Part shown: positions 29,971 through 62,172 of the stretch, one piece after another | How positions within the stretch are numbered: position 1 is the stretch's first letter | How the letters are laid out: each line of letters begins with the position of its first letter | Virus record (IMG/VR): IMGVR_UViG_3300017917_003143 | Span: 124,001-188,000 of that record | DNA: 64,000 nucleotides | Reading direction: 5' to 3' (one strand) | The notes under the pieces: model-generated | What the model saw: the letters and a program-made list of their open reading frames with translations, nothing else | The model's database searches: none | What the model was told of the DNA's origin: nothing | Made by a program: the position numbers and the translations under genes

Positions 29971-30488
29971 TGGCACAACTATATCGTATCACACCGCTGG
30001 AAAAAAAGTCAATGGAATATTTCGTTGACGTGTTTGAGCGTCGAGAGGACGGTAGCATCCGTGGATTCCAAGTCACCGAAACCTGGCGTTGGGGTCAAGC
30101 GTTCCGTGAACTCGACGATCCTGTGTATGAAACAGAAATGGACCGTGTGCATTGCCGACCTGAAATTGGTTGGGGGTGCGAGCTTGACGATCTCTGTGCT
30201 GTCTGGGTAGAGTTCGACGAAGATGAGTTTACCGAAGAAGAAATGGACGAAATCCGCAGTATCCTGAATTGGGAGTCTGAAGACGAAGATGGACGTTGTG
30301 GCACTGCTTGGTTATACGATGGCGATCACAATTGGGAAATCGAAGATGATCATGTTGCTGTTTTGGGCCCAGTAAAGATTGACCTTATCGACGAAGATTC
30401 GTATAATGAGATTATTGAAGAAAATGTAAAACCTACCAAACTGGAACCATCCACTGGATGGCCGTTTAAGCCCAAGGAATCAGAATGA
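29970..30488 (+). CDS. acidic hypothetical protein
   Basis: 172 aa coupled ORF. Confidence 0.7.
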   Translation: MAQLYRITPLEKKSMEYFVDVFERREDGSIRGFQVTETWRWGQAFRELDDPVYETEMDRVHCRPEIGWGCELDDLCAVWVEFDEDEFTEEEMDEIRSILNWESEDEDGRCGTAWLYDGDHNWEIEDDHVAVLGPVKIDLIDEDSYNEIIEENVKPTKLEPSTGWPFKPKESE

Positions 30489-30934
30489 ATCAAGAACAAA
30501 GAGCCACAGTAGACCGTATCATAGAATCAGCAGATCGCAAGATCTGGGTCACATTCCGTAGAGAAGGCATCCATAAATATCCTGCGGCGCTGACGGATCC
30601 TGCGCTGGCCACAGGAGATGAATATGATGTATCGTTTTTGGGTTATCCTCATCGCCACATCTTTCATTTCAGGGTGTGGATCGATGTGTTCCACAATGAT
30701 CGGGACATCGAGTTCATCCAGTTCAAACGATGGATCGAGTCGCTGTATAATGGTCAAGGTTCCGTTTTAAGCCTTGATTACAAGTCTTGCGAAATGATCG
30801 CAGACGATCTGTATCTACAAATAGCCGGTCGTTATCCAGGCCGTGCTGTGTGGATTGAAGTAGCCGAAGATGGTGAGAACGGCTGCCTCATTAAGTATGA
30901 AACTCACCGTCCCTATAATTCAATCGTTATCTAA
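30485..30934 (+). CDS. QueD-like T-fold protein, DpdL-like (putative CDG decarboxylase)
   Basis: LGYPHRHIF = LxxxHRHxF (30638-30664); SCEMIA; EDGENG. Confidence 0.7.
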   Translation: MNQEQRATVDRIIESADRKIWVTFRREGIHKYPAALTDPALATGDEYDVSFLGYPHRHIFHFRVWIDVFHNDRDIEFIQFKRWIESLYNGQGSVLSLDYKSCEMIADDLYLQIAGRYPGRAVWIEVAEDGENGCLIKYETHRPYNSIVI

Positions 30935-30945
30935 AGGAAATCATC

Positions 30946-31215
30946 ATGGGCCGAACCTTGTTCAAACCCAATCCTCGCAGTCGTCAGGTCTGGGAAGACC
31001 TCGATCGTTATCTCAACTTTTGTGTGGACTATGGCTATCGCTATGATCCAGCAGATCTCTATAACAACCGGAGTTATCCATTCCAGCAGTTCCGTAAATT
31101 AGAAGCTGGCAAGGATCCTAAAGACATGTGGACTGAAGACAGCCGCAGATTTGCAGGCTATCGTCCAGATTTCAAGCGTGACGATCGCCGCCCTCGTGGA
31201 GATCGCCGTGCGTAA
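30946..31215 (+). CDS. hypothetical protein
   Basis: 89 aa, SD AAGGA. Confidence 0.7.
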   Translation: MGRTLFKPNPRSRQVWEDLDRYLNFCVDYGYRYDPADLYNNRSYPFQQFRKLEAGKDPKDMWTEDSRRFAGYRPDFKRDDRRPRGDRRA

Positions 31216-32401
31216 ACTATACTACATGGGCCTTGAGTCATACGAGGCTCGTTATACACTACAACTCACAGAATGGAATCGACGTGTTTTTGACCGCCGT
31301 GGCCTAGATGTTGTGTATGTGCCTGGATCAACTATTGACAATACCAAGAGTATTTCAGTAGGTCAGGTTTTAGACGCACACGGTCGCAGTTATTTTGGCA
31401 TGAGCCAGATGATGAATCTTGTACAGATGATGCGAAATGGAGAGGTCACAAATGAAGATGTCATTTATTTCGAAGATATGTTCCAGCCCGGTATCGAGAG
31501 CTTACCTTACATTATGGATCAGATCCCTGCAAATGATCGCCCTCGCATTTACGTTCGCTGTCTTGCTCAATCCATTGATCCTGATGATTTCGTACATGTA
31601 TGGGGTATGGCGAAATGGATGGGACTCTACGAACAAATGGTTAACGAGTTTGTTACAGGAGTTCTCGCCACAAACGAAGAGATGGTTGCTCATATGCGGA
31701 TTGCTGGATGGACTGCTCCTATATACAATATTAGTGGTCTAGCATTTGGCAAAGATGAAGTTCTCAGTCGAGTACAACTTCCTACTCCTTTTGAACAAAG
31801 ACCCAAGCGTGTGGGTTTTGCCGCGAGATTCGATCAAGAAAAGCAACCAGGATTCTTCATGGACTTGGTAGAAGAATATCAAAAGGTCTACCCAGATGTA
31901 CAGTTTGCTATCTATCAGGGCGGACCATTGCGTTCGAACAATCCTGAATACATCGATCGCGCTCGTCGATTAGAGTCCGAAGGTAAACTTTTGATTTTTG
32001 AAAATCTAAGCAAGAACGAATACTACCATCATCTGGCACACAACACTCGAGTGTTGTTTAACTGTGCCTTGCAAGACTGGGTTTCAAACACTGTCAGCGA
32101 AGCAGATACCTTGGGCTGTAATGTGCTGTATCCTGCTTATCGTAGTTTCCCAGAAACCTTTGCCAATGATCCTGATCGTTTGTATATTCCTTGGAGCGAA
32201 GACGATGCCTTCAACAAGTTGACAAATCTCTTGCGCACTCCACATCACAACATGGGATTGATTTCTGAATGGAACAATCGAACCATCGATCGTATCGTAG
32301 ATATCATCGAAGGCAATGGTGAACAATGGAATCGTAGCGGTAATCGTTACAGAGATCACGTTCCATACGCCAAATACCCAGTGGTCAAGATTGAAGAATG
32401 A
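31208..32401 (+). CDS. GT-B fold glycosyltransferase
   Basis: ARFDQEKQP; SEADTLGCNVLYP; likely GTG start 31208. Confidence 0.75.
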   Translation: MRKLYYMGLESYEARYTLQLTEWNRRVFDRRGLDVVYVPGSTIDNTKSISVGQVLDAHGRSYFGMSQMMNLVQMMRNGEVTNEDVIYFEDMFQPGIESLPYIMDQIPANDRPRIYVRCLAQSIDPDDFVHVWGMAKWMGLYEQMVNEFVTGVLATNEEMVAHMRIAGWTAPIYNISGLAFGKDEVLSRVQLPTPFEQRPKRVGFAARFDQEKQPGFFMDLVEEYQKVYPDVQFAIYQGGPLRSNNPEYIDRARRLESEGKLLIFENLSKNEYYHHLAHNTRVLFNCALQDWVSNTVSEADTLGCNVLYPAYRSFPETFANDPDRLYIPWSEDDAFNKLTNLLRTPHHNMGLISEWNNRTIDRIVDIIEGNGEQWNRSGNRYRDHVPYAKYPVVKIEE

Positions 32402-33351
32402 GTAGAATAATTGTAACAGGCGCAGGTGGATACATCGGAGGCCAGACAGTATTGAAACTGTTAGATCAAGGTCATAGTGTATATGCAGTTGATCAAACAC
32501 TTCCGCCACCTCATCTAATGGACGTCGGATGCAAATGGCTCACAGGTGACTTTGCCGGAGAAGTATTTTTAAGCTCTATCAAAAGTTTCAATCCAGAAGC
32601 CATCATCCATTGCGCCGGGACCAGTCTAGTAGGCCCTAGTGTAACCAATCCAATGTTGTACTATGACAATAACTTTGTCAAAACTAAAACAATGTTGGAT
32701 TACTTGATCCAAAACAAACTCACTGACATTCGTGTGATTTTTAGTTCTTCAGCGGCTACATATGGAGAACCGATAATGACTCCGTGCCAAGAAGAAGATC
32801 CAGCATTGCCGATCAGTCCTTATGGTGAAAGCAAACTCATGATCGAAATGATGATGAAAGCCTACGCCAATGCTTACGACTTGGATTTTGTTGCCTTCCG
32901 TTACTTCAATGCTTGCGGTGCTGATAGCCAAGCTCGTCATGGGCAAGCACCAGGTGCCACGCATATCATTGCTCGGGTACTTGAAAGTATTAGAGACGGC
33001 AAAGATTTTACTTTGTATGGCGATAACTATCCCACTCCTGATGGAACATGTATAAGAGATTACATACACGTGGAAGACATCGCTAATGCACACATCATGG
33101 CGATAAACTCGTCCGTTCCTGCAGGTGTTTATAACCTTGGCACGAATCAAGGCGCCAGCAATCGAGAAATCATTGCCATGTCTGAAAAAGTAACAGGACA
33201 ACAGGTTGATCTTGCAGTGGGTCCTATCCGTGCTGGAGATCCTGCTGTGCTCACTGCGTCAGCTGAACGATTTAACTCTATCAGTGGGTGGGCACCACAG
33301 TTTAATCTCGAAGACATGGTCCGACATGCCTGGACTTGGTATGTTCGATAA
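32398..33351 (+). CDS. galE: UDP-glucose 4-epimerase
   Basis: TGAGGYIG, SSSAATYG, YGESK, FRYFNACG, RDYIHVED. Confidence 0.92.
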   Translation: MSRIIVTGAGGYIGGQTVLKLLDQGHSVYAVDQTLPPPHLMDVGCKWLTGDFAGEVFLSSIKSFNPEAIIHCAGTSLVGPSVTNPMLYYDNNFVKTKTMLDYLIQNKLTDIRVIFSSSAATYGEPIMTPCQEEDPALPISPYGESKLMIEMMMKAYANAYDLDFVAFRYFNACGADSQARHGQAPGATHIIARVLESIRDGKDFTLYGDNYPTPDGTCIRDYIHVEDIANAHIMAINSSVPAGVYNLGTNQGASNREIIAMSEKVTGQQVDLAVGPIRAGDPAVLTASAERFNSISGWAPQFNLEDMVRHAWTWYVR

Positions 33352-33919
33352 GATACTAAAGTTTGAAAATGAGTTGGCAGAGTACACAGGTGCTCCCTAT
33401 GCCATCATGACTGACTGCTGTACACATGCCATCGAACTGTGTTTGCGGCATGACAAGATCAGAGAATGCCAGTTCACTGCTTATACATATCTTTCAATAC
33501 CCATGCTCATGCACAAGTTGGGCATAGAGTATCAATTGATAGATCAGACTTGGACTGGCGAATATCATTTTATCAATACCAGAGTCTGGGATAGTGCTCG
33601 CAGATTAGAAAGAGGAATGTATCGCCCTGGATCCATGCAGTGCTTGAGCTTTGGTTACGGAAAACCCCTGGAGATTGGCCGTGGCGGAGCGATATTGTTG
33701 GATGATCAACGAGCTTACGAAATCATGATAAAGCAACGCTATGATGGGCGAGACTTGTCTATCATGCCCTGGCAAGATCAGCGAGAATTCAGTGTTGGAT
33801 ATCATTACAAACCCACCATCGAAGAAGCCGTGCGAGGTTCAGAATTATTGCCTCTGGTCAATGAGGAACCTAAATATGTACAGTACCCAGACTGTAGAAA
33901 TTTTATAATTAAGGATTAA
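33341..33919 (+). CDS. short DegT/DnrJ-type PLP aminotransferase
   Basis: CTHAIEL, DSA, SFGYGKPLEIGRGGAI; 192 aa only. Confidence 0.7.
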   Translation: MFDKILKFENELAEYTGAPYAIMTDCCTHAIELCLRHDKIRECQFTAYTYLSIPMLMHKLGIEYQLIDQTWTGEYHFINTRVWDSARRLERGMYRPGSMQCLSFGYGKPLEIGRGGAILLDDQRAYEIMIKQRYDGRDLSIMPWQDQREFSVGYHYKPTIEEAVRGSELLPLVNEEPKYVQYPDCRNFIIKD

Positions 33920-34521: not shown

Positions 34522-35355
34522 TTGACAACATTTACATCAGAAGATCTAGAAAATTCTAAAAAATTAGTAGCAGAAGCACCATACCATCCCGGCTATGAAG
34601 ATGCAGTGATAGACAATGTCCTTGTCGGAGCAGAGCAACAAGGCGATGACGACAAAAATTATCAAGAAGCCTATCTCGGTGATGCTATCCGTTTCAAGAT
34701 GAAGCGTGATCGCAAACGTTTCTGGGCAGGAGACAACATCAGCGACTATGTCAGCGAAGAAGATAAAAAAATCTTGATCGACGAAGCCGCAGAGGCGTTT
34801 GAACTGGTTCTTGATCGTTTGCTGATCGATCGTGAAAACGACCCCAACTCCAAAGGCACAGCACGACGCTTGGCCAAGATGTACTTCAATGAAATAATGG
34901 CAGGACGTTATGACCCAGCACCCAGTGCCACAGCATTTCCAAATGATTCGGAGGACCGTTACGAAGGTATGTTGGTTGTCCGTAGTGAGCTTCGCAGTAT
35001 GTGTAGCCATCATCACCAGCCCGTTAGTGGTGTTGCTTATATTGGTATTATTGCCGCTCATAAACTTATCGGTCTATCAAAGTACACACGCATCGCACAG
35101 TGGTGTGCCCGACGTGGTACTCTCCAGGAGGAACTTGCTAATGATATTTGCAGGGAAATCAGCAAAGCAACCGACAGTCAAAACGTAGGGGTGTATATCC
35201 AAGCAATACATGGTTGCTGTGAGAATCGTGGTATCATGGCACACTCAAGTCTTACACAGACCACTGTGCTCACAGGAGTATTCAAAACAGATCCTGCTGT
35301 GAAAAAAGAGTTCATGGATAATATCAAACTGCAACAAGAGTTTGCACCACGATGA
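34522..35355 (+). CDS. folE: GTP cyclohydrolase I
   Basis: SMCSHHHQP, GLSK, QEEL, HGCCENRG; TTG start with GGAG. Confidence 0.93.
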   Translation: MTTFTSEDLENSKKLVAEAPYHPGYEDAVIDNVLVGAEQQGDDDKNYQEAYLGDAIRFKMKRDRKRFWAGDNISDYVSEEDKKILIDEAAEAFELVLDRLLIDRENDPNSKGTARRLAKMYFNEIMAGRYDPAPSATAFPNDSEDRYEGMLVVRSELRSMCSHHHQPVSGVAYIGIIAAHKLIGLSKYTRIAQWCARRGTLQEELANDICREISKATDSQNVGVYIQAIHGCCENRGIMAHSSLTQTTVLTGVFKTDPAVKKEFMDNIKLQQEFAPR

Positions 35356-36026
35356 CATATTGTCTGAGTCCAATGACCACAAAAGAAATTAGCACCCTGG
35401 TTGGTGCTAATTTTGTTTCTACTTTCCAAACAGAGATGGATGCTGTGTTGGCACCACTGAGAAAATATATTGCGTTGGGCCGACCGTTGAGCTTAGGCAA
35501 AGAACTTTGGGAATACGCAGTAAGCGATAGTATACCCGGTGCTGTTTGGAATGGTGCAGGACACAGTCTCATCGATGTTAAAATTGGATCAGACATTGGC
35601 ATCGACGTTAAAAGTGTGAGCAAACAAGAAAAGTCAAAATTGACCACTGAAGCCAGCATATTCCAAAATTTTAATCAAGATGCCAAGACACATTTTTCTA
35701 ACAAGAATACCCAAGGTGTTTGGGACATACATGTCCAGGGGTGGCTTGATAAAATATCCACGATCAAAAAATACTATATGCTAGGCATTATTCGAGACAA
35801 AGCCACATTGGATTGTTGTCTCTGTGGATTTAAAGTAGTCAGTACTTCTGCCATTTTGTCTGAGTGTCAGCATAGATACACAGGGGCTACTATCAAGTTC
35901 CATGATTTGGTAGATCCAGATTTTGCCGATGTACACTACTACAACAGCAAAAGCCGGTTGGAAATCAAATTTAAAAAACGGTGCTGGTCCGATCCAAATT
36001 ATCATCTCCCAATTTACCAATTTTGA
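35352..36026 (+). CDS. putative PD-(D/E)XK restriction-like endonuclease
   Basis: ELWE...IDVKIGSDIGIDVKS. Confidence 0.45.
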   Translation: MTYCLSPMTTKEISTLVGANFVSTFQTEMDAVLAPLRKYIALGRPLSLGKELWEYAVSDSIPGAVWNGAGHSLIDVKIGSDIGIDVKSVSKQEKSKLTTEASIFQNFNQDAKTHFSNKNTQGVWDIHVQGWLDKISTIKKYYMLGIIRDKATLDCCLCGFKVVSTSAILSECQHRYTGATIKFHDLVDPDFADVHYYNSKSRLEIKFKKRCWSDPNYHLPIYQF

Positions 36027-36100: not shown

Positions 36101-38005
36101 ATGCGTAAAACCATTTTGGCTGTCATTGCAATGGCCGCCTTTCCGGTTTATAGCCAAACACCACAGTCCTTTTTAGATATAGAAACCAATAGGACTTCGG
36201 CCGCGGCTGTGGGTGCCAATTGGGCTTGGAGCCGTGGATATACCGGCAAGGGTGCCACTATCTTGATCATGGACTCGGGTATCGATGTCAACAATCGAGA
36301 GTTTGCAGGGCGTATCAAATATTCCATTGACTATACTGCAACAGGATTACAAGACAAAGTAGGACACGGTACCCATGTGGCCGGTATTGCGGCCGCAGCC
36401 AACAATGGATTGGGCACACAAGGTATCGCATATGATGCCAACATCGCAGTGGCCAAGATAACCAATACCAGTTCCGTGAGCATGCAATCAGCGCAGAGAG
36501 CATTGGTCTGGGCCGGACAGTACAGTGATATAGTAGTAGCCAATCTTTCTGCCAACGTCAACTATAGCACCGCATATCTATCAGCCATGCGCCAAGTGGC
36601 ACCAGGCATGTTTGTCAACACAGACAGGATCTATGGCGGTAAAAATTATTACAATCTTGAAAATCCAGGCTCGTGGAAGCTACCAGCCGAAATGGTTCTC
36701 ACGGTGTCTGCTGGTAACAGCCGAGCTGGATTTGTACAAAGTCCGGCAGTATTCGCCACAGCAACAGATGCCTCAGGTAACTTGGTCTTGGGCGGTCGCA
36801 TGTTGGTAGTAGGCAACTGGAACACCAGCCTCAATGTAGTAGAAGGTGCCCAGGCAGGGCATATATGTAAAGACTTTGTCAACAACACTTGCCAAGATCG
36901 TTATCGTACCAGTGATTTTTATATCCTAGCACCAGGATCTGGTATCGTCAGCACTGGTATCGGAGATACCACCCGTACTATGAGTGGTACCAGCCAAGCC
37001 GCGCCTACTGTGGCCGGAGCAGTGGCGGTGATCAATCAAATGTGGCCTTATATGAAAGGTGAGCAGATCGCACAGTTATTGCTCAAGACTGCCAACAAAA
37101 ATCTTCCTGGATATCGTGTTGAAGTCATGGGACAAGGTCTTTTAGATCTTAACAGAGCAACTCAACCCATAGGCAACCTAGGTATCTCAACTACAGGACG
37201 CACTGGTCCTGCTAGACCCATCACAGGATCGATCAGTGTGGCTAATGTGGGTGCTGTAGCTGGTAAATTAAGCTCAGTCACTGTGGTCGATGAATTCCAG
37301 AGAGATTACCGCGTAGACATCAGCAGTATGGCCACTAAAAACATGTGGACGCAGTCAGCGTTCCTACTTGATGCCGCTCCAGGACAAAGCTGGTCAAGTC
37401 GTTGGACCGGAGTTCCAGTGGCATCAAACATGGGTGTATATGGTCAAACATTAGGAAACAATTCTACAGTGACTATTGACACAAGGCATCTCAACCCTAC
37501 TGCACAGTTCAGTCATCAAGTCACTGTGACCAACACAGAAGTCAATCCATTTATACAATTTTCAGGCATGTGGGGCACTGTGCAAGGGGCGACTACATTT
37601 GAATACTCTACAATGTATCGTCCCAAACCCGAAGGGTGGTATGGTCAGATGGGAGTTATGCAAACTTCCACCCGATATCAACCAGGCATGATCGAACGGG
37701 TAGATCCAATTTACAGCGTTCACGCCATGGCCGGTTACCAGATACAAGGTTGGAACCTATTTGGCGGAATCAAACCCACAGTGATCCACGGAAATATAAC
37801 CATGCGATTACCGGGCGATGTTGACAGTGATGGCAATTTACAGTATAATACTACAAAAGTAAGTCTGGCAGGTGCCCGACCAGTGAGTTACATTGGTACC
37901 GGTTGGCAACATCAGTGGCGAGGCGGTCATGGATTTGCTTTCCGTACCATGCTTGCCGAAGACAAATCTAACATGACCCGGGTCAACTATACATATAGGT
38001 TTTAA
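36101..38005 (+). CDS. S8 subtilase with signal peptide and autotransporter-like C-terminal barrel
   Basis: MDSG, HGTHVAG, GTSQAAP; ends VNYTYRF. Confidence 0.85.
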   Translation: MRKTILAVIAMAAFPVYSQTPQSFLDIETNRTSAAAVGANWAWSRGYTGKGATILIMDSGIDVNNREFAGRIKYSIDYTATGLQDKVGHGTHVAGIAAAANNGLGTQGIAYDANIAVAKITNTSSVSMQSAQRALVWAGQYSDIVVANLSANVNYSTAYLSAMRQVAPGMFVNTDRIYGGKNYYNLENPGSWKLPAEMVLTVSAGNSRAGFVQSPAVFATATDASGNLVLGGRMLVVGNWNTSLNVVEGAQAGHICKDFVNNTCQDRYRTSDFYILAPGSGIVSTGIGDTTRTMSGTSQAAPTVAGAVAVINQMWPYMKGEQIAQLLLKTANKNLPGYRVEVMGQGLLDLNRATQPIGNLGISTTGRTGPARPITGSISVANVGAVAGKLSSVTVVDEFQRDYRVDISSMATKNMWTQSAFLLDAAPGQSWSSRWTGVPVASNMGVYGQTLGNNSTVTIDTRHLNPTAQFSHQVTVTNTEVNPFIQFSGMWGTVQGATTFEYSTMYRPKPEGWYGQMGVMQTSTRYQPGMIERVDPIYSVHAMAGYQIQGWNLFGGIKPTVIHGNITMRLPGDVDSDGNLQYNTTKVSLAGARPVSYIGTGWQHQWRGGHGFAFRTMLAEDKSNMTRVNYTYRF

Positions 38006-38649: not shown

Positions 38650-39189
38650 ATGGCAAAATATCTTTCTACAAAAACATATGGCAACGATCGTGGACTATCA
38701 TGCTGTTTCCGCCAATGGCGTTCAACACATAGTCACTGCTCATTGCTACATGGATATTCCATCGGTATCAAACTAATCTTTGAAAGTGAAACACTAGACG
38801 ACCGTAATTGGGTCATGGACTTCGGTGGACTCAAAGCATTCAAAGAATGGAGCGAATACATGTTCGATCACACACTGGTCATTGCTGAAGATGATCCTCA
38901 TCGTGAAATGTTTGAAAAAATGGCCGAGCTTGGTTTACAAGATCAAGGCGGAGTATGTGACATTCGTATTGTGCCAGCTGTAGGTTGTGAAAAGTTTAGT
39001 GAACTGGCTTACAAAACTATGGAAAATATTCTCCGAGCATTCCAAGCAGGCAATTCTTGGTTCCTTGTAGCACAAGATGGAATTACCTTAAAAGAATTCA
39101 ATTGCCGTTACCCTGTTGGTCAAGGTGTCAAGTTACGTTCTGTAGAAGTATTCGAACACAACGCAAACTCAGCAGTCTACGAAGGTTAA
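38650..39189 (+). CDS. queD: 6-carboxy-5,6,7,8-tetrahydropterin synthase
   Basis: CSLLHGY, MDFGG, FDH, E..ANSA; SD AGGAG. Confidence 0.9.
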   Translation: MAKYLSTKTYGNDRGLSCCFRQWRSTHSHCSLLHGYSIGIKLIFESETLDDRNWVMDFGGLKAFKEWSEYMFDHTLVIAEDDPHREMFEKMAELGLQDQGGVCDIRIVPAVGCEKFSELAYKTMENILRAFQAGNSWFLVAQDGITLKEFNCRYPVGQGVKLRSVEVFEHNANSAVYEG

Positions 39190-39191
39190 TC

Positions 39192-40049
39192 ATGAGCACA
39201 ACGCCAAAAGTAGGTATCAACAAAATATGGTCTCAACCAGCCACTCATCAAATATCAGTTTTGCTCCCCACTCGGGGCAGGACTGACATGCTGAAAAGAA
39301 GCCTAATGAGTTTGCTTGATTTGGCCAGCGATCCTACCGAGATAGAGTTGATGATGGCGTTTGACAACGATGACAAAGAGTCTCTTGCATGGTGTCAACA
39401 AAACATTTTTCCTGAATTAGAAAAACGTGGAGTTGACGCCATGGTAATCGAGTTTACTCCGTTAGGGTATCTTAGATTGCATGAATATCTCAATGCCTTG
39501 GCCGGATTGGCCAATGGCGGTTGGTTGATGTTTTGGAACGATGATGCAGTGATGCAAACCCAAGACTGGGATAAAAAAATTACCGAGCACAATGGAAAGT
39601 TCTTGTGTTTGCGTATGCCCACACACAATCAACATCCTTATGCTATCTTTCCTATCGTACCTAGAGACTGGTACTACTTGTTGGGACATCTCAGCAATCA
39701 TCAGCTCACTGATGCCACTATCAGCCAAATATCCTATGTGCTGAATATCATGAAAAACATTGATGTCGAAGTTTTGCATGATAGATTTGACATCACTGGC
39801 AACAACGGTGATACAACATTTAAAAATCGTCCAATGCTGGAAGGGAATCATGAGGATCCTCGAGACTTCAATCATGTGATTTTCCGCAACAAACGCATAG
39901 CAGATGCCAATCGCATCGCATGGTATCTCGAGCGCATCGGTCAGCCCAGCGAATGGTTTACGGAAGTGATGACAGGAAAAAAAGACCCCTGGGAATACAT
40001 GCTCAGTGAAGAACAAGATCCAAATGGACAAGTAAGAATACATGCTTAA
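39192..40049 (+). CDS. GT2 family glycosyltransferase
   Basis: ISVLLPTRGR, MFWNDD. Confidence 0.75.
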   Translation: MSTTPKVGINKIWSQPATHQISVLLPTRGRTDMLKRSLMSLLDLASDPTEIELMMAFDNDDKESLAWCQQNIFPELEKRGVDAMVIEFTPLGYLRLHEYLNALAGLANGGWLMFWNDDAVMQTQDWDKKITEHNGKFLCLRMPTHNQHPYAIFPIVPRDWYYLLGHLSNHQLTDATISQISYVLNIMKNIDVEVLHDRFDITGNNGDTTFKNRPMLEGNHEDPRDFNHVIFRNKRIADANRIAWYLERIGQPSEWFTEVMTGKKDPWEYMLSEEQDPNGQVRIHA

Positions 40050-40830
40050 TATCGATCAACACTTATTAGATAAAATCAAGGCTTACTGGAATCGCCAGCC
40101 TTGTAACATATTACACGGTCGTAGCGAGCTTGGGACTCCTGAGTTTTATCAAGAAGTGTCCGAGCGCCGTTATCGTGTAGAACCACACATCAGAGAGTTT
40201 GCTGGATTCCATCTATGGGCTGGCAAGCGAGTGCTGGAGATTGGCTCAGGCATCGGCAGTGATGCTGAAGAGTTTGCCAAGCGTGGTGCTGAATACGTAG
40301 GTGTGGACTACAGCGATCAGAGTGTAGAGATTTCCCGACAACGGTTCCAAGTCCTTGAACTTGATGGCGAGTTCCACAATATTGACGCCAGCGATACCTC
40401 GGCTTTAGAGTCATTGGGACAGTTCGATCTTGTGTACAGTTATGGTGTGATACATCACTTTCCTGCCATTGACACCATCATCGACAATGTACATCGTGTG
40501 CTCAAACCCGATGGAGAATTCCGATTCATGGTGTATGCCAAGAACTCTTGGAAATATGCTATGATACAAAAAGGTCTGGATCAATTTGAAGCACAAAGCG
40601 GTTGTCCTTATGCACAGGCATATACCAGAGAAGATATCTATCGCATGCTGGAAGGTCAATTCCATGTGGAACGACTACGCCAGGATCATTGCTTTATGTA
40701 CAATGTACCTGCGTACAAACGTGGTGAATATGAACTAGAACCGTGGTTTGAAGCCATGCCTGAAGATGTTCGACAAGCAGTAAAAGAATACTTGGGATGG
40801 CATTTGCTGGTCAAGGCTAAAAAGATATAA
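40042..40830 (+). CDS. class I SAM methyltransferase
   Basis: VLEIGSGIG, FDLVYSYGVIHH, LKPDG. Confidence 0.85.
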   Translation: MLNIDQHLLDKIKAYWNRQPCNILHGRSELGTPEFYQEVSERRYRVEPHIREFAGFHLWAGKRVLEIGSGIGSDAEEFAKRGAEYVGVDYSDQSVEISRQRFQVLELDGEFHNIDASDTSALESLGQFDLVYSYGVIHHFPAIDTIIDNVHRVLKPDGEFRFMVYAKNSWKYAMIQKGLDQFEAQSGCPYAQAYTREDIYRMLEGQFHVERLRQDHCFMYNVPAYKRGEYELEPWFEAMPEDVRQAVKEYLGWHLLVKAKKI

Positions 40831-41573
40831 TGAGAAACTTACAACGATACCTACAAGATGTTGCCAACGCCAGGAGGCAAGAACTACTTCCTTATATGTT
40901 CCATGTCACTGATGCCCAGGTACAGACTGGGCCATTCGCTGGGATCACTCTTATACCCAGATACATGTGGGGCGATGGAGACACAGCGGCCAAGCTCATG
41001 GGCGTCTATGAAGATGAACTACATGACTTTGTTGAACAAGCGATCAAACAAGATCCGGACACTGTGATCAATGTTGGCTGTGCCGAAGGTTATTACAGCG
41101 TGGGATTCGCAAAGCGTTTGCCCAAGGCCAAAGTGCTGGCAGTAGACATCGATCTAAGAGCGGCGCTGATAGTGAGAGACACAGCATCGGCTAACCAGCT
41201 TACGAATCTTGAAGCTGTAACTTATACTGTAGATCATTCTTGGTTGGAACAAAAATGCCAACCTACAACAAATCCTTTGTTGGTATTTGACTGTGAAGGT
41301 GCCGAGTTGGATCTGCTTGATCCTGTCAAAGTTCCTTCCTTGACCAAGTGTTCGATCATGGTTGAGTGTCATGACTGCATGAATCTGCCAATCACATCTA
41401 CACTGCTGTCACGATTTGGATCTACACACGACATCCAGCAAGTGTCTCAGACCTACAAAGATTCTTACCAATTTGAGTTTTTAAAACATCTCAGTGACTG
41501 CGACAAGTGGGCCTTGGTCCATGAAGGAAGACCCAGCACTATGAGTTGGTTATACATGGTGCCCAAACAATGA
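40830..41573 (+). CDS. FkbM-like methyltransferase
   Basis: INVGCAEGYY, FDCEGAE. Confidence 0.7.
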   Translation: MRNLQRYLQDVANARRQELLPYMFHVTDAQVQTGPFAGITLIPRYMWGDGDTAAKLMGVYEDELHDFVEQAIKQDPDTVINVGCAEGYYSVGFAKRLPKAKVLAVDIDLRAALIVRDTASANQLTNLEAVTYTVDHSWLEQKCQPTTNPLLVFDCEGAELDLLDPVKVPSLTKCSIMVECHDCMNLPITSTLLSRFGSTHDIQQVSQTYKDSYQFEFLKHLSDCDKWALVHEGRPSTMSWLYMVPKQ

Positions 41574-42295
41574 AAAACTATCTATTCAAAAGTTTGTTCC
41601 AAGTACGCGATCCAAACTGGCATTTCAAAGACCGCAGTGGCGAACAAGATCTACATAAAAAATATGTAGAGATGCATCAAATTTCCGTTGGCAGTTACAC
41701 ACGTCATCTCAAAGGCAACTGGGAACTAAAATTCATACAAGGCACGGTTGACAACATCAATGATGCGTTCAAACGAACCTTTAGAGAAATTTACGACCTG
41801 TGGCGGCAAGGCAACACAAACATCTTTTATACAGATCCTGATACCATTGCTATCAAAGACATTGATCCTTGGCAAATATCTGATCAGTTTATGATGTTTA
41901 ATTTTACAGATCCTAAGAGTTTGGGAACCAACAATCAATACGGTCGCAAGTTTCCACACTTTTTCAATGCTGGTGTAAGATTCTTCCCTGCAGGCATGGA
42001 ACAGCGGATCTGGGACATTGGGCTAGAAATGCTTGACAACTGGGAAGAAGGCACATATAACACAGAACAAACCATACTCAATGCCATGCTTTGGGATCAA
42101 GGAGTCACCTTAGATCAAGTGTTGCGCCCCGAATGGGCATACCAAGCGCAATGGTTGCCTAATCAAGCACCGCTGTGGGTACAGGATACATGGAATGGTG
42201 TTGATATCAATCGAAGCTTGATCATACACACCCATAGCAGTAGAGACATCGATGAGAAGCTGGCCTTCATGAAACAACTGTCTGGACAGGCATGA
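41570..42295 (+). CDS. nucleotide-diphospho-sugar transferase (GT-A)
   Basis: FYTDPD, FNAGV, EQTILN. Confidence 0.6.
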   Translation: MKNYLFKSLFQVRDPNWHFKDRSGEQDLHKKYVEMHQISVGSYTRHLKGNWELKFIQGTVDNINDAFKRTFREIYDLWRQGNTNIFYTDPDTIAIKDIDPWQISDQFMMFNFTDPKSLGTNNQYGRKFPHFFNAGVRFFPAGMEQRIWDIGLEMLDNWEEGTYNTEQTILNAMLWDQGVTLDQVLRPEWAYQAQWLPNQAPLWVQDTWNGVDINRSLIIHTHSSRDIDEKLAFMKQLSGQA

Positions 42296-42897
42296 AAGAT
42301 ATATTCACCAACATCGTTGAGCACGGACAGTGGAGAGCAGGCCACACAGTGTGTGGTAATGGTAGCACCATGCACTACACTGATTATCTGCGCCAACACC
42401 TCAGCGCATTCCTAGAGAAGCACCAAATCAGTTCGATGTTTGATGCACCTTGTGGGGATTACACATGGATGAGCCAAATCCAGCTTTCAGCTAACTTACG
42501 TTATATCGGCGGGGACATTGTTGACAGTTTGATTGAAAAAAACAAGCAATCTTATCCAACTGTAGATTTTCGTGTAGTTGACATAGCCCAAGATGATTTA
42601 CCTGATGTAGATTTGCTTTTTTGTCGAGATTGTTTGATACATTTTAGTCATGCTGATATACGCAGAGTGTTTGAAAATATCTCTCGTAGCAGTATAAAAT
42701 ATGTGTTGATGACTAACTATGCTCATTCAGACAACTCAGACATTGCCACCGGAGGATTCCGTGGAGTTAATTTTCTTCAGGCACCGTACGAATTTGAAGC
42801 ACCCATAGACAGTATCGAAGATTGGGTACCAGGGTATGCACCAAGAAGTATGTGCCTTTGGAACCGTGAAACCATTATTGGATATTTAGAAAAATGA
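42292..42897 (+). CDS. class I SAM methyltransferase
   Basis: FDAPCGD, YIGGDIV, CRDCLIH. Confidence 0.8.
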   Translation: MKDIFTNIVEHGQWRAGHTVCGNGSTMHYTDYLRQHLSAFLEKHQISSMFDAPCGDYTWMSQIQLSANLRYIGGDIVDSLIEKNKQSYPTVDFRVVDIAQDDLPDVDLLFCRDCLIHFSHADIRRVFENISRSSIKYVLMTNYAHSDNSDIATGGFRGVNFLQAPYEFEAPIDSIEDWVPGYAPRSMCLWNRETIIGYLEK

Positions 42898-43472
42898 AAA
42901 AAGTTTATGTAAGCTGGACCGATGTACAAAGACAAACACAAGAAATCATAAGACAGATGTATCTAGATGAGTGGCGCCCAGACTACATCGTAGGTATCAC
43001 TCGAGGAGGCTTGGTACCGGCCAATCTTATCAGTCAATATCTTGACGTACCAATGTATGCTCTGCAAGTACGATTAAGAGATGGCGGCGATGAAGATTGT
43101 GAAAGCAATCTCTGGATGAGCGAAGAAGCATTTGGATATCACAGAACCGATGACTTGCCTGGGGCAAGCAATCCTACCCTTAGGAAAAATATTCTCATCG
43201 TAGACGATATAAACGACTCAGGCGCCACTATAAACTGGATACGCCAAGACTGGCAAACAACTTGCTTGCCCGACGACCCGGCCTGGGCCAATATCTGGGG
43301 CAACAATGTACGTATAGCCACACTGTATGACAACGAGACCAGTGCCGCGGAAATTTATGTAAATTACACAGCCGAAACAGTAAACAAATTCGAAGATCCG
43401 CAGTGGATAGTATTCCCCTGGGAAGAGTGGTGGAAGAAATGGCATCCCAATGAAGAACACATCAAGTCCTGA
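42894..43472 (+). CDS. purine phosphoribosyltransferase (Gpt-like)
   Basis: GITRGGLVP, LIVDDINDSGAT, WIVFPWE. Confidence 0.85.
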   Translation: MKKVYVSWTDVQRQTQEIIRQMYLDEWRPDYIVGITRGGLVPANLISQYLDVPMYALQVRLRDGGDEDCESNLWMSEEAFGYHRTDDLPGASNPTLRKNILIVDDINDSGATINWIRQDWQTTCLPDDPAWANIWGNNVRIATLYDNETSAAEIYVNYTAETVNKFEDPQWIVFPWEEWWKKWHPNEEHIKS

Positions 43473-43941
43473 AATACTTTTGGTCATGGTGCATGTTTGG
43501 CAGGACATGCCCGAATTAGAAAACATACGCTGGCAAGAATTTAGCCAATTGATAGTAGACAAGGCCAACAGTATCAATTGGCCAAAAATTTGGCAATTTG
43601 ATTTTATCGATAAAAATACATTCAATTCGTTGAAACAAAACAAGATCGTTCAAAACAGCCAGGTGATGCCTCAAGGAAAAGTACCACACACCGATATCGT
43701 ATATGGACCCAATGATTGGATCTCTACTTCAGATTCGCAAACTGCCCAGATCATAAAATCGATAAATCCCACGATAGTCATCTTCGGCGGGCTACACAAA
43801 GATCTATGTGTGACCGGAGTAAAACTGGCTGTAGAGGATGATCAAAGAGAATATTTTGTTAGTGACAGACTGGCGTACACTTGGAAAGAAACCGCAGCCG
43901 CTGTTTACAAGGATTGGGGAAATGATACAACCGTTACGTGA
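43450..43941 (+). CDS. isochorismatase-like (possibly degenerate) protein
   Basis: IVIFGGLHKDLCV. Confidence 0.35.
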   Translation: MKNTSSPEILLVMVHVWQDMPELENIRWQEFSQLIVDKANSINWPKIWQFDFIDKNTFNSLKQNKIVQNSQVMPQGKVPHTDIVYGPNDWISTSDSQTAQIIKSINPTIVIFGGLHKDLCVTGVKLAVEDDQREYFVSDRLAYTWKETAAAVYKDWGNDTTVT

Positions 43942-44347
43942 TGACTTGATGGTACAGCAACAGCTACCAAAGATAACCGATTGGACGCATCGTTGGTTAC
44001 ACATGGTGGCTGTGATAATGCTCAATCAAACAGGACGCAAGCCCGTGAAAACAGTGTTTCCAGTATTTGCCGAACGCTGGCCACATCCACTGAATTTCCT
44101 GGAAGCTACCGAAACTGAAGTCAAAGATGTGATCTGGCCCTTGGGCATGGTCAATGTTCGGTACAATAGGTTAAGAAGAATGACCCAAGACTACTTTACT
44201 TGGGACGGAGAAGATGCTACAATGTTATATGGTATTGGCAAATATGGGTCGGACAGCTATGAGATATTCTTCAAACAGAACTATGCTGTTGAGCCCACAG
44301 ACAAAGAACTAAAAAGGTACTTAGATGAAGAAGTATTCGTTTCATGA
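43922..44347 (+). CDS. MBD4-like HhH-GPD DNA glycosylase
   Basis: IMLNQT, PLG...R, LYGIGKYGSDSYEIF. Confidence 0.85.
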   Translation: MIQPLRDDLMVQQQLPKITDWTHRWLHMVAVIMLNQTGRKPVKTVFPVFAERWPHPLNFLEATETEVKDVIWPLGMVNVRYNRLRRMTQDYFTWDGEDATMLYGIGKYGSDSYEIFFKQNYAVEPTDKELKRYLDEEVFVS

Positions 44348-44666
44348 TGTTGGTGGCGAGATAGTCAAAGACAACGAAGTTTATTTGTTGAAAGACAATC
44401 ACGATCTAAATAATCTCGTGCTGAGCTCTACCAAGCTCTACAGGCATCAACAAACTCGTGGGCACAGGCACCCTGGACAAGAAGAAGTATATTTCTTTAT
44501 ACAAGGCACAGGAAAGATGATCGTAGGCGAAGAAACCGATGAACCTTTTTCTGTCAGTGCTGGAGATATTGTGTTGATCCCTGATGGTGCATTTCATCGT
44601 GTGATCAACGATGGAGAGACACATTTAATTTTTAATTGCGTATTTGATGGCAAAAGGAATCATTGA
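44325..44666 (+). CDS. cupin domain protein
   Basis: GHRHPGQEEVY...G; GDIVLIP.G.FH. Confidence 0.85.
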   Translation: MKKYSFHDVGGEIVKDNEVYLLKDNHDLNNLVLSSTKLYRHQQTRGHRHPGQEEVYFFIQGTGKMIVGEETDEPFSVSAGDIVLIPDGAFHRVINDGETHLIFNCVFDGKRNH

Positions 44667-45547
44667 TGGAAAAGATTACATACACAGAGATATTTTACAG
44701 CATCCAAGGTGAAGGACGTTGGGCAGGTGTGCCCAGTGTATTCTTCCGCACATATGGATGCAACTTCCGCTGTCGTAAGTTTGGTCGTCCGCGAGACGAA
44801 CAGCTGGAAGGACACAATCCTGAAGTGATCGAGATCATCAAGAACATCGATCAATACAAAAAGTTTGAAGACTTGCCTTTGGCCAAAACTGGCTGTGACA
44901 GCTATGCCAGCATTTACCCTGAGTTCAAGCGATTCAACGAACAAGACAGCGTAGAAACTATCGTAGACAAGATGCATGCTCTCATACCCAACAATCGTTG
45001 GGATCAAGGCATAGGTGATGACGTGCATCTCGTGATTACAGGTGGTGAGCCATTGCTGGGTTATCAGCAACTGTATCCTGATCTCATCGAATACTGTCGT
45101 CGAGCTGGTCTACGCAATCTAACATTCGAGACCAACGGCAGCCAGCCTTTGCATCCAGAAGTGTATGAATATTTGTTTGAAGAGTTTACACGTCATGGCA
45201 GAGACTACGACAAGCTGACATTCAGTGTGAGCCCAAAACTACCTTGCTCGGGCGAAGCATGGGATGTAGCAATCAATCCCAAAGTGGTCAAGAGCTATGA
45301 AATGGTAGGCATGACTTATCTCAAGTTTGTTGTGGCCACACCACAGGATGTGGCAGATGCTGAACGTGCTGTGGAAGAATATCGAGAAGCCGGTTTTGGC
45401 GGCCCTGTGTATCTCATGCCCATGGGCGGTGTACCTGATGTATACAATCTCAACACACAGCAAGTGGCAACATTGGCCATGGAACGTGGATGGCGTTACA
45501 GTCCTAGACTACAAGTGGATATCTGGCGTAATGCTTGGGGTACCTGA
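44663..45547 (+). CDS. queE: 7-carboxy-7-deazaguanine synthase (radical SAM)
   Basis: SIQGEG, FRTYGCNFRC...CDS, ITGGEP, ETNG, SPK, YSPRLQ. Confidence 0.9.
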   Translation: MMEKITYTEIFYSIQGEGRWAGVPSVFFRTYGCNFRCRKFGRPRDEQLEGHNPEVIEIIKNIDQYKKFEDLPLAKTGCDSYASIYPEFKRFNEQDSVETIVDKMHALIPNNRWDQGIGDDVHLVITGGEPLLGYQQLYPDLIEYCRRAGLRNLTFETNGSQPLHPEVYEYLFEEFTRHGRDYDKLTFSVSPKLPCSGEAWDVAINPKVVKSYEMVGMTYLKFVVATPQDVADAERAVEEYREAGFGGPVYLMPMGGVPDVYNLNTQQVATLAMERGWRYSPRLQVDIWRNAWGT

Positions 45548-61611: not shown

Positions 61612-62172
61612 ATGACAGCAGATGAACTACGACAAGGTATCTTTTTATTGAATACAAGACGATTTGGCAAAGTGGCCGAAGTCATGATCAAGCTGATCAA
61701 GCAGTTGGGCAAAGGTAAAAACATCTTCCATGATTTGTACGACGAAACAAAGAAACAGCGAGTAGAAGTCAAGTTCTCCACTGTGCGACAGAGCTTGCCC
61801 CCGATCACAGAAGCAAACATCCTGGAAAGCATACAAGCAGAGATGCTGGCCAATCGTGCTGTAAAGTTTAAGAACTGGAAAAAGCACGATTTCTGGTGCA
61901 ACATACAGCAGGTAAAGAAAACTGAATTTGAAGTCTTGTACTACGGATTGTTTTTTGATGACTGCATCAAGATCTTCCGCATCACACCTGATCGCATTGA
62001 CGCCACCATTGGATACAACAACAAACAGCACAAAGGCAATGTGGGAGAAGGTCAATTCCATATCAACCCGGAAACCTTACAGACTCACTTAGACAACTAC
62101 TTGATACAGACACTGAGCTATCAAGATCTATTAAATCTATTATCACCATGTACACCTCCAACATCCGAGTAG
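61612..62172 (+). CDS. putative PD-(D/E)XK endonuclease
   Basis: FGKVAE...HDLYD...VEVKFS. Confidence 0.55.
   Translation: MTADELRQGIFLLNTRRFGKVAEVMIKLIKQLGKGKNIFHDLYDETKKQRVEVKFSTVRQSLPPITEANILESIQAEMLANRAVKFKNWKKHDFWCNIQQVKKTEFEVLYYGLFFDDCIKIFRITPDRIDATIGYNNKQHKGNVGEGQFHINPETLQTHLDNYLIQTLSYQDLLNLLSPCTPPTSE

What the first reader, a model, noticed from the sequence alone, without database searches (positions are those of the whole stretch)
35352..36026. Restriction-like nuclease coupled to folE: phage self/non-self system
Seen: a PD-(D/E)XK-like ORF overlaps the folE stop (ATGA); a second lies at 61612..62172. Inference: nucleases that cut unmodified host or competitor DNA while deazaguanine protects the phage, in effect a phage-borne restriction-modification pair.
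Basis: inference. Interest (0 to 1): 0.62.

Follow-up and report, generated by a model that had tools for sequence, protein, structure and literature searches.

The report
Orphan restriction nucleases in a jumbo phage
A 344-kb freshwater phage carries two restriction-enzyme-like nucleases without any protecting methylase, and it seems to stay safe because its own DNA has lost the cut sites, not because of deazaguanine.

Summary
ORF 35352-36026 starts in an ATGA overlap with the folE stop. It is conserved (more than 120 relatives), has an invariant D75...D85-x-K87 motif, folds confidently, and matches type II restriction endonucleases almost exclusively. It is predicted to form a symmetric homodimer. 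Remote kin are fused to, or sit beside, M.HhaI-like C5 methylases.

ORF 61612-62172 is also a PD-(D/E)XK restriction enzyme, and its target can be read from genomes. All 56 viral contigs that carry it without a methylase contain no ATTAAT (554 expected). All 15 contigs with an adjacent adenine methylase keep ATTAAT.

The phage has no detectable partner methylase of either kind and no DpdA. Its 343,632 bp contain no ATTAAT, no AGCGCT and no RCGCGY.

Self-protection is therefore best explained by absence of sites, not by deazaguanine. ATTAAT has no G at all.

The deazaguanine idea is not dead. FolE, QueD, QueE-like and DpdL-like genes are present, and folE-nuclease coupling recurs in about 40% of relatives. 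The target of the folE-linked nuclease stays unproven; AGCGCT is the lead candidate, but avoidance is clade-wide, including fragments where the gene was not found.

The parts
35352..36026 (+). P0001: 224-aa solitary PD-(D/E)XK restriction-endonuclease-like gene. It founds a family with no Pfam, PHROG or NCBIfam model.
   Evidence: ORF and translation. 120 homologues, all about 224 aa. AF2 pLDDT 93.4. VIA-align top hits are type II REases. Profile search finds remote kin fused to or next to HhaI-like C5 MTases. Homodimer prediction ipSAE 0.73 against best control 0.37.
35502..35612 (+). Catalytic core of P0001: E51, E54 (helix), D75 (strand 2) and D85-V-K87 (strand 3).
   Evidence: Invariant columns in alignment A1. 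Secondary-structure positions in the model. Codons read.
35352..35355 (+). ATGA start/stop overlap between folE and P0001 (translational coupling).
   Evidence: Sequence. The same CGATGAC junction occurs in about 16 related loci.
34522..35355 (+). folE, GTP cyclohydrolase I, the upstream neighbour. The true start may lie downstream of the listed TTG.
   Evidence: PF01227 E 4.9e-39, phrog_2197, NCBIfam FolE. 74-90% identical in related loci.
61612..62172 (+). P0002: 186-aa solitary type II restriction endonuclease. Its inferred specificity is ATTAAT (AseI/VspI type).
   Evidence: PADLOC REase_II E 3.5e-6. 1183 homologues. Chromosomal and viral kin lie next to N6-adenine MTases. ATTAAT is 0 in all 56 orphan loci and present in all 15 paired loci. 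Fold matches NhoI at Z 10.6.
61732..61773 (+). Catalytic motif of P0002: D41 (with D44) ... E52-V-K54.
   Evidence: Invariant columns in alignment A2.
30485..30934 (+). DpdL-like T-fold protein (proposed 7-carboxy-7-deazaguanine decarboxylase). Context for the deazaguanine question.
   Evidence: phmmer 5e-14 and BLASTP 3e-20 to Cellulophaga phage phiST CGPG_00067, with the motif L-GYP-HRH-I-F. Identity of CGPG_00067 as DpdL from Cui et al..
38650..39189 (+). QueD-like 6-carboxytetrahydropterin synthase (context).
   Evidence: PF01242 3.7e-12. NCBIfam QueD 9e-9. BLASTP 4e-38 to phiST QueD.
44663..45547 (+). QueE-like radical SAM protein (context).
   Evidence: NCBIfam QueE models at 1e-12 to 1e-8, below their cut-offs. 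phmmer 2.8e-6 to phiST QueE.
42894..43472 (+). Purine (xanthine/guanine-type) phosphoribosyltransferase, syntenic with folE and QueE in relatives (context).
   Evidence: PF00156 3e-14. NCBIfam xanthine PRTase 1e-12. Synteny.

Best explanation
Both ORFs are solitary (methylase-less) type II restriction endonucleases carried by a T4-like jumbo phage of freshwater.

Shown:
- P0001 has the PD-(D/E)XK fold with an invariant catalytic motif and is predicted to be a symmetric homodimer.
- It belongs to a wider family whose remote members are fused to, or convergent with, M.HhaI-like C5 cytosine methylases. That is the arrangement of genuine R-M systems.
- P0002 belongs to a restriction-enzyme family that is partnered with N6-adenine methylases in bacteria and in some phages.
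- Wherever P0002 kin occur without a methylase, the surrounding DNA has no ATTAAT at all.
- The phage has no detectable methylase of the partner classes, and no ATTAAT, AGCGCT or RCGCGY in 343,632 bp.

Inferred:
- The phage tolerates its own nucleases because its genome lacks their sites. This is restriction without modification, as described for PacI in a bacterium.
- It uses them early or late in infection to cut host and/or co-infecting foreign DNA that carries the sites.
- P0001 most likely cuts a GCGC-core palindrome. AGCGCT is the leading candidate and RCGCGY the second, but this assignment is not demonstrated.
- The ATGA coupling to folE reflects co-transcription and co-translation in a variable accessory block (folE | nuclease | protease | HIT). 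It does not reflect a functional need for deazaguanine.
For: Fold and motif of P0001. Homodimer: ipSAE 0.73 against best control 0.37, contacts agree at least 95%, pLDDT at least 89. This mark was reached by 20 of 30 solved homodimers and 1 of 23 monomers.

R-M ancestry of the P0001 family:
- P0300 is a PF00145 methylase (1e-53) fused to a P0001-like domain. Its methylase matches M.HhaI through the target-recognition region (3e-28, against 2e-18 for the next).
- P0259 lies convergent to a C5 methylase that matches M.HhaI over its full length (4e-51).

P0002:
- PADLOC REase_II hit and MTase neighbours.
- 56 orphan loci (704 kb, at least 10 clusters at 70% identity) have 0 ATTAAT, against 553.5 expected (zero-order) or 239.7 (Markov).
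- 15 MTase-paired loci have 176 against 213.5 expected.
- Control P0001 loci have 474 against a Markov expectation of 503.

Own genome:
- Exactly five strand-merged hexamers are absent: ATTAAT, AGCGCT, ACGCGT, GCGCGC and ACGCGC/GCGCGT. Neighbouring words such as GGCGCC, TGCGCA, TCGCGA and CCGCGG are normal.
- No PF02384, PF01555 or TGT gene was found.

The 72 P0001-bearing loci (953 kb) have AGCGCT 0 (Markov 36) and RCGCGY 3 (Markov 26).

Precedents: PacI, and solitary REases counted in phages.
Against: - No cleavage was measured.
- The link between P0001 and a particular site is only circumstantial. AGCGCT and RCGCGY are avoided clade-wide. This includes 389 kb of close relatives in which no P0001 was found (fragments 12-30% complete).
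- A 72-kb relative that lacks P0001 at the syntenic place still has only 2 AGCGCT and 1 RCGCGY. Host R-M pressure could therefore explain those two avoidances.
- Two avoided G/C sites but only one G/C-candidate nuclease were found.
- The structural Z-scores of P0001 (at most 7.8) are in the range that the tool calls middling.
- The recurrent embedding of P0001 among deazaguanine-pathway genes is left as positional rather than explained.
Confidence: 0.55

Rival explanations
1. P0001 cuts unmodified G-containing DNA of host or competitors. Phage DNA is protected because guanine is replaced by a 7-deazaguanine made by the FolE-QueD-QueE-DpdL genes. In effect this is a restriction-modification pair.
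For: - The folE|P0001 junction occurs in 26-27 of 66 assessable loci, many with the same ATGA overlap. A further 11 loci have P0001 within about 4.5 kb of folE in the same block.
- The phage has FolE, QueD, a QueE-like gene and a DpdL homologue with the DpdL signature. This is the gene set of phiST, whose DNA carries dDG (Cui et al.).
- A purine phosphoribosyltransferase is syntenic with these genes. It could offer a DpdA-independent route (my inference).
Against: - No DpdA of any subfamily is detectable, and DpdA is the signature of all known cases.
- G-containing palindromes are completely purged, which a shielded G should make unnecessary.
- Close relatives have folE followed directly by HIT, with no nuclease (L186, L190, L218, L220). 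G006 also lacks it in the folE-to-S8 gap.
- 28 of 66 P0001 loci have no folE nearby.
- The second nuclease's site has no G.
Confidence: 0.2
2. P0001 is a free-standing homing endonuclease or selfish mobile gene, like the seg and mob genes of T4 or the PD-(D/E)XK enzyme I-Ssp6803I. It would spread by cutting nuclease-less relatives near folE. The palindrome avoidance would be unrelated.
For: - Presence/absence polymorphism of a single gene at the folE|HIT junction.
- At least three genomic positions among relatives.
- P0001 identity is incongruent with exo53 identity (L045: 46% against 77%; L022: 82% against 65%).
- I-Ssp6803I is among the structural hits (Z 5.3).
Against: - Constant length and 46-91% identity over more than 120 clusters, with invariant catalytic and dimer-interface residues.
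- Remote kin sit in R-M pairs with C5 methylases.
- The predicted symmetric homodimer fits a short palindrome.
Confidence: 0.08
3. P0001 is a structure- or damage-specific nuclease of phage DNA metabolism (resolvase, MutH/Vsr-like nicking or recombination nuclease). It would lie in the replication block next to the 5'-3' exonuclease. The site avoidance would be driven by host R-M systems alone.
For: - Hjc resolvases and MutH are among the structural hits (Z 4.6-5.5).
- 11 loci place it right after the 5'-3' exonuclease gene.
- AGCGCT and RCGCGY avoidance persists in relatives' fragments without a P0001 hit.
Against: - The best and most numerous hits are sequence-specific type II enzymes.
- Family members are fused or paired with DNA C5 methylases.
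- It is not universal in the clade, as a core replication function would be.
Confidence: 0.12

Closest known systems
PacI of Pseudomonas alcaligenes (solitary restriction endonuclease; the host genome lacks its sites)
   Same: A restriction enzyme kept without a cognate methylase. The carrier's genome is safe because it has no recognition sites (as cited in Ershova et al. 2012).
   Different: From my own knowledge, PacI is a bacterial HNH-type enzyme with an 8-bp site. Here the carriers are phages, the enzymes are PD-(D/E)XK, the sites are 6 bp, and the purge recurs in 56 viral contigs of at least 10 sequence clusters.
Orthodox type IIP restriction endonucleases of the EcoRV/PvuII/NaeI/ThaI branch, and NhoI
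   Same: PD-(D/E)XK core, acidic residues plus lysine on strands 2 and 3, and a small homodimer. Kin are paired with methylases.
   Different: No detectable sequence similarity to any solved enzyme. No methylase partner in this genome.
AseI/VspI-type ATTAAT restriction-modification systems
   Same: P0002 kin are partnered with N6-adenine methylases, and ATTAAT is the one word that vanishes when the methylase is missing.
   Different: Identity with the named commercial enzymes was not tested, because no reference sequence was at hand. The specificity is inferred from genomes, not measured.
Chlorovirus R-M systems (virus-encoded restriction enzymes that degrade host DNA)
   Same: A virus-borne site-specific nuclease aimed at host DNA (my own knowledge; chlorovirus methylases appear in PMC7248222, listed).
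   Different: Chloroviruses protect their DNA with cognate methylases. This phage has none detectable and instead lacks the sites.
Phage 7-deazaguanine DNA modification (DpdA with FolE/QueD/QueE, plus or minus QueC or DpdL), e.g. phiST, CP220, 9g
   Same: FolE, QueD, QueE-like and DpdL-like genes are present.
   Different: No DpdA1-4 or TGT was detected. No nuclease is part of the described systems.

Membership tests
PD-(D/E)XK nuclease superfamily (P0001) | Alpha-beta-beta-beta-alpha-beta core fold | tested here: met
   AF2 pLDDT 93.4. 16 of the 17 best VIA-align hits are PD-(D/E)XK nucleases (ThaI Z 7.8 with 159 aligned residues, NhoI 6.6, NaeI 6.2, EcoRV 5.8 and others). The Z values are middling by the tool's own note.
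PD-(D/E)XK nuclease superfamily (P0001) | Conserved D...(D/E)-x-K on strands 2 and 3, plus a helix acid | tested here: met
   D75, D85, K87, E51 and E54 are invariant in 35 sequences down to 46% identity. They sit on strands 76-78 and 82-91 and on helix 50-60.
PD-(D/E)XK nuclease superfamily (P0001) | Metal-dependent phosphodiester cleavage | not testable with these tools
   Needs purified protein.
Orthodox type II restriction endonuclease (P0001) | Homodimer acting on a short palindrome | tested here: inconclusive
   The dimer is supported by prediction only: ipSAE 0.73 against best control 0.37, with a symmetric interface at residues 31-55, 66 and 69. The site is not determined. AGCGCT and RCGCGY are absent from all carriers, but also from fragments without the gene.
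Orthodox type II restriction endonuclease (P0001) | Cognate DNA methyltransferase encoded beside it | tested here: not met
   There is none next to it, and the phage gave no hit for the two amino-MTase families searched, PF02384 and PF01555. C5 methylases (PF00145) were not searched genome-wide. Remote kin do have one.
Type II restriction endonuclease, ATTAAT-specific family (P0002) | Homology to a restriction-enzyme model and PD-(D/E)XK fold | tested here: met
   PADLOC PDLC03414 REase_II E 3.5e-6. NhoI Z 10.6, Eco15I-N 8.2, I-Ssp6803I 8.1. D41 and E52-x-K54 are invariant.
Type II restriction endonuclease, ATTAAT-specific family (P0002) | Family members paired with a methylase able to protect the site | tested here: met
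   Gamma-type N6_Mtase/Eco57I/TaqI_C neighbours and beta-type PF01555 neighbours. Both classes can methylate adenine, and A and T are the only bases in ATTAAT.
Type II restriction endonuclease, ATTAAT-specific family (P0002) | Recognition of ATTAAT | tested here: met
   Indirect but clean. ATTAAT is 0 in 56 of 56 orphan loci (expected 553.5; Markov 239.7) and present in 15 of 15 paired loci (176 against 213.5). It is the only palindrome among the most depleted hexamers in the pooled loci (0.23 of expected), on a par with a few G/C-rich words. Cleavage itself was not tested.
   PF01702: no hit, while 14 of 14 controls were positive. PF20314 (DpdA4): none. phiST DpdA3 by phmmer: best E 1.5. A very divergent DpdA cannot be excluded, since DpdA3 itself needed HHpred to be found.
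   FolE is strong, QueD is 4e-38 to phiST, QueE-like is weak, and DpdL-like is 3e-20 with its motif. QueC is absent; the weak hit is NAD synthase.
Free-standing homing endonuclease | Sporadic single-gene presence or absence between conserved genes | tested here: met
   folE|P0001|HIT against folE|HIT in close relatives.
Free-standing homing endonuclease | Long asymmetric target in the nuclease-less allele, and gene conversion | not testable with these tools
   Needs cleavage mapping and co-infection crosses.

The most novel reading that the evidence does not exclude
Restriction without modification is a widespread offensive device of phages. A phage lineage purges one 6-bp palindrome from its whole genome and carries the matching methylase-less restriction enzyme to shred host or rival-phage DNA. 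P0002 does this with ATTAAT in many marine and freshwater phages. P0001 founds a new restriction-enzyme family doing the same with AGCGCT (or RCGCGY) in a large clade of freshwater jumbo phages. In addition, the neighbouring FolE-QueD-QueE-DpdL genes, with a purine phosphoribosyltransferase and no DpdA, may feed 7-deazaguanine into nucleotides before replication.
Probability: 0.3. Interest if true: 0.8.

Novelty: new variant of a known kind. Interest (0 to 1): 0.62.

Why it matters
Restriction enzymes are normally read as bacterial defence and are held to be lethal without their methylase.

Here a methylase-less enzyme family sits in dozens of unrelated phage contigs. All of them have erased the enzyme's site, and the site comes back wherever a methylase is present.

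Three things follow:
- It gives a genome-only way to read restriction specificities.
- It points to phage use of restriction enzymes as weapons against host or competitor DNA.
- It means that palindrome avoidance in phage genomes cannot be ascribed to host R-M systems alone.

It also adds an unannotated restriction-enzyme family (P0001) that could have a useful specificity. Finally, it flags a deazaguanine gene set without the supposedly universal DpdA.

Tried and rejected
Searches that gave no answer:
- Pfam, PHROGs, NCBIfam and PADLOC on P0001: nothing.
- Sequence and profile searches of PDB with P0001, P0002, A1 and A2: nothing significant.
- Foldseek of the P0001 model against PDB: no hit below E 0.001, only a weak enrichment of REases. 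VIA-align was needed.
- megablast and tblastn of the region, P0001 and P0002 against 50,697 phage records: no match.
- Paralogue search in the genome with the A1 and A2 profiles: none. No second P0001-like gene therefore explains RCGCGY.
- Sequencing runs: only pond and lake DNA runs, no RNA holder.

Ideas rejected:
- The QueC lead turned out to be NAD synthase.
- The P0001|QueC-like|radical-SAM arrangement of L002 is not shared by other loci.
- ORF 31151-32401 as a hidden DpdA: rejected, it is a GT4 glycosyltransferase.
- A DpdA3 profile could not be built, because tblastn finds only phiST-like and one Chryseobacterium phage homologue.

Attempts to tie P0001 to AGCGCT rather than RCGCGY stayed inconclusive:
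- Distant homologue loci lack both sites.
- Relatives that contain sites are fragments without P0001.
- Five long fragments without a P0001 hit still have 0 AGCGCT.
- G006 lacks P0001 at the syntenic place and has 2 AGCGCT and 1 RCGCGY.

P0002 was not found in five relatives' fragments, which is uninformative.
Full report
**The object.** The window is bases 124,001-188,000 of a 343,632-bp viral record that CheckV rates 99% complete. Its family-B DNA polymerase is 42-50% identical to those of Sinorhizobium phage Phosso, Agrobacterium phage Atu_ph07, Vibrio phage 2.275.O and the Rak2/GAP32-like jumbo phages. The stretch occurs in pond and lake metagenomes. ORF 35352-36026 (P0001, 224 aa) begins with an ATG whose last two bases, plus the next A, form the TGA of the upstream ORF 34522-35355. 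That upstream ORF is GTP cyclohydrolase I. ORF 61612-62172 (P0002, 186 aa) is also there.

**P0001 is a restriction-type PD-(D/E)XK nuclease.** No family library or PDB sequence search recognises it. A word search found 120 clusters, all about 224 aa, 46-91% identical and all unnamed.
- In an alignment of 35 of them, E51, E54, D75, D85, K87, E100 and Q105 are invariant.
- The AlphaFold model (pLDDT 93.4) places E51 and E54 on helix 50-60, D75 at strand 76-78 and D85-V-K87 on strand 82-91. This is the canonical layout.
- Foldseek gave nothing below E 0.001.
- The exhaustive VIA-align search gave ThaI (Z 7.8), NhoI, NaeI, EcoRV, MspI, HhaI, SwaI, MutH, HinP1I, PvuII, SfiI, I-Ssp6803I, DpnI, BglI, Hjc and NlaIV as 16 of the first 17 hits. 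The Z-scores are middling, but the list is uniform.
- A homodimer test passed: ipSAE 0.73 against best control 0.37, run contacts agree at least 95%, pLDDT at least 89. That mark was reached by 20 of 30 solved homodimers and 1 of 23 monomers. The interface is symmetric, built from the highly conserved residues 31-55, 66 and 69.
- A profile search of 1.84 billion representatives found 154 relatives. P0300 is a C5 DNA methylase (PF00145, 1e-53) fused to a P0001-like domain. P0259 lies convergent to a 315-aa C5 methylase.
- Both methylases match M.HhaI far better than any other solved methylase, and through the target-recognition region (3e-28 and 4e-51).

The P0001 family thus descends from genuine R-M restriction enzymes, probably with a GCGC-core site.

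**P0002 is a restriction enzyme whose site can be read from genomes.**
- It hits a PADLOC type II REase model.
- It has an invariant D41 ... E52-x-K54.
- It folds like NhoI (Z 10.6), the Eco15I N-domain and I-Ssp6803I.
- It has 1183 relatives.

Chromosomal relatives sit next to a methylase of about 650 aa of the N6_Mtase/Eco57I/TaqI_C type. I fetched 71 viral loci that carry a relative.
- In the 15 loci where a gamma-type or beta-type (PF01555) methylase is adjacent, ATTAAT is present: 176 observed against 213.5 expected.
- In the 56 loci without one, ATTAAT is absent in every locus: 0 observed against 553.5 expected (zero-order) or 239.7 (Markov).
- These 56 loci have 30-47% G+C and form at least 10 clusters at 70% protein identity.
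- Loci chosen for P0001 serve as a control: 474 observed against a Markov expectation of 503.

**How the phage protects itself.** The phage gave no hit for either methylase family that partners P0002 (PF02384, PF01555) and none for TGT. In its 343,632 bp exactly five strand-merged hexamers are missing. With their zero-order expectations they are:
- ATTAAT (143)
- AGCGCT (67)
- ACGCGT (67)
- GCGCGC (46)
- ACGCGC/GCGCGT (116)

The last three together make RCGCGY. Neighbouring words (GGCGCC, AGCGCC, TGCGCA, TCGCGA, CCGCGG) occur at normal rates, so the losses are site-specific.

ATTAAT has no G, so deazaguanine is irrelevant to protection from P0002. Total purging of G-containing palindromes also argues that G is not shielded, at least when it matters. 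The simplest model is restriction without modification. It has a bacterial precedent in PacI, and solitary REases have been counted in phages (12 in 831). I found no description of the purge-plus-orphan pattern in phages. This search covers only the open-access library.

**Which site belongs to P0001?** All 72 P0001-bearing viral loci (953 kb, down to 31% identity) have 0 AGCGCT (Markov 36) and 3 RCGCGY (Markov 26).

AGCGCT is the favoured candidate for three reasons:
- The methylase partners of remote kin are HhaI-like.
- The structural neighbours include many blunt-end cutters. (That Eco47III/AfeI cuts AGC^GCT blunt is from my own knowledge.)
- AGCGCT shows no exception in any carrier.

I could not demonstrate it:
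- The avoidance is clade-wide. The 80 closest relatives by their 5'-3' exonuclease have 8 AGCGCT and 20 RCGCGY in 793 kb.
- Five long fragments (389 kb) with no P0001 hit have 0 AGCGCT, while the control word occurs 6-22 times.
- A 72-kb relative that lacks P0001 in the folE-to-protease gap has 2 AGCGCT and 1 RCGCGY.

Because these are fragments and P0001 changes position, absence cannot be asserted. No paralogue exists to account for the second site.

**Linkage to folE and the deazaguanine question.**
- Of 66 assessable loci, 26-27 have folE|P0001, about 16 with the same CGATGAC overlap.
- In 11 loci P0001 sits just after the 5'-3' exonuclease, about 4 kb from folE.
- In about 28 loci it lies elsewhere.
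- In close relatives folE is followed directly by the HIT gene (L186, L190, L218, L220).

So P0001, and here also a subtilase, are variable inserts at that junction.

Besides FolE there are three further genes:
- a QueD (4e-38 to phiST QueD)
- a QueE-like radical SAM protein
- at 30485-30934, a homologue of phiST DpdL with the LxxxHRHxF signature (Cui et al. 2023)

QueC is absent. DpdA, which that paper calls the signature of all deazaguanine-DNA phages, is not detectable by PF01702, PF20314 or phiST DpdA3. DpdA3 originally needed HHpred to be found, so a very divergent one cannot be excluded. A purine phosphoribosyltransferase is syntenic with these genes. From my own knowledge of tubercidin and toyocamycin biosynthesis, this suggests a nucleotide-level route, which I could not test.

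**Verdict.** Both ORFs are real restriction-type nucleases with a phage self/non-self logic. The non-self mark is most likely the presence of sites that the phage has erased, not the absence of deazaguanine. P0002 as an ATTAAT enzyme is strongly supported. P0001's target and its relation to the deazaguanine genes remain open.

Noticed in passing
window 30485-30934, 34522-35355, 38650-39189, 42894-43472, 44663-45547: FolE, QueD, QueE-like and DpdL-like genes are present: the phiST-type gene set for free 7-deazaguanine. A syntenic purine phosphoribosyltransferase is also present, but no QueC and no detectable DpdA. This may be a DpdA-independent, nucleotide-level route, or a non-DNA product.
   Followed up: partly
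whole genome G000 and loci L006-L077: RCGCGY (ACGCGT, GCGCGC, ACGCGC/GCGCGT) is completely absent from 343.6 kb and nearly absent from 953 kb of related contigs (3 observed, about 355 expected). No gene accounts for it, and I know of no enzyme with this degenerate site.
   Followed up: partly
whole genome G000: There is further partial avoidance. GTGCAC occurs 5 times (expected 67), CGTACG 14 times (67), and the pentamer GCAGC/GCTGC is at 0.31 of its Markov expectation. GATC is not avoided.
   Followed up: no
window 31151-33919 and 39057-42897: A GT4 glycosyltransferase, an NAD-dependent epimerase/dehydratase, a DegT-type aminotransferase, a weak GT2 hit and three or four SAM methyltransferases are interleaved with the deazaguanine genes. 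This could be a sugar-nucleotide or hypermodification module.
   Followed up: no
window 36101-38005: A 634-aa subtilase (Peptidase_S8) lies between P0001 and the HIT gene. It is absent at this junction in several relatives, so it is a second variable insert.
   Followed up: no
window 43838-44347: A weak HhH-GPD (DNA glycosylase superfamily) hit, below Pfam's cut-off, lies between the phosphoribosyltransferase and the QueE-like gene. The ORF is syntenic in L006, L026, L213 and L220.
   Followed up: no
L149:8001-10256 (protein P0300): A natural fusion of an M.HhaI-like C5 methylase with a P0001-like nuclease domain (751 aa). It lies in an island with RE_Bsp6I, EVE, Mrr_cat and a second C5 methylase.
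   Followed up: partly
window 62503-63561: A 352-aa AAA/STAND-like ATPase lies about 330 bp downstream of P0002. Relatives of P0001 in L004 also have an AAA ATPase and a DUF2201 (VWA-like) gene a few kb away.
   Followed up: no
G000:C1:91637-92476 (outside the window; L005:1384-2223): The phage encodes an NAD synthase (NadE; PF02540, 5e-51).
   Followed up: no
window 48888-50813: A 641-aa B12-binding radical SAM protein lies in the same block.
   Followed up: no
Viral-contig search: More than 600 IMG/VR stretches encode a close relative of this phage's 5'-3' exonuclease. The clade is therefore very abundant in freshwater metagenomes but has no cultured member in the phage collection.
   Followed up: no
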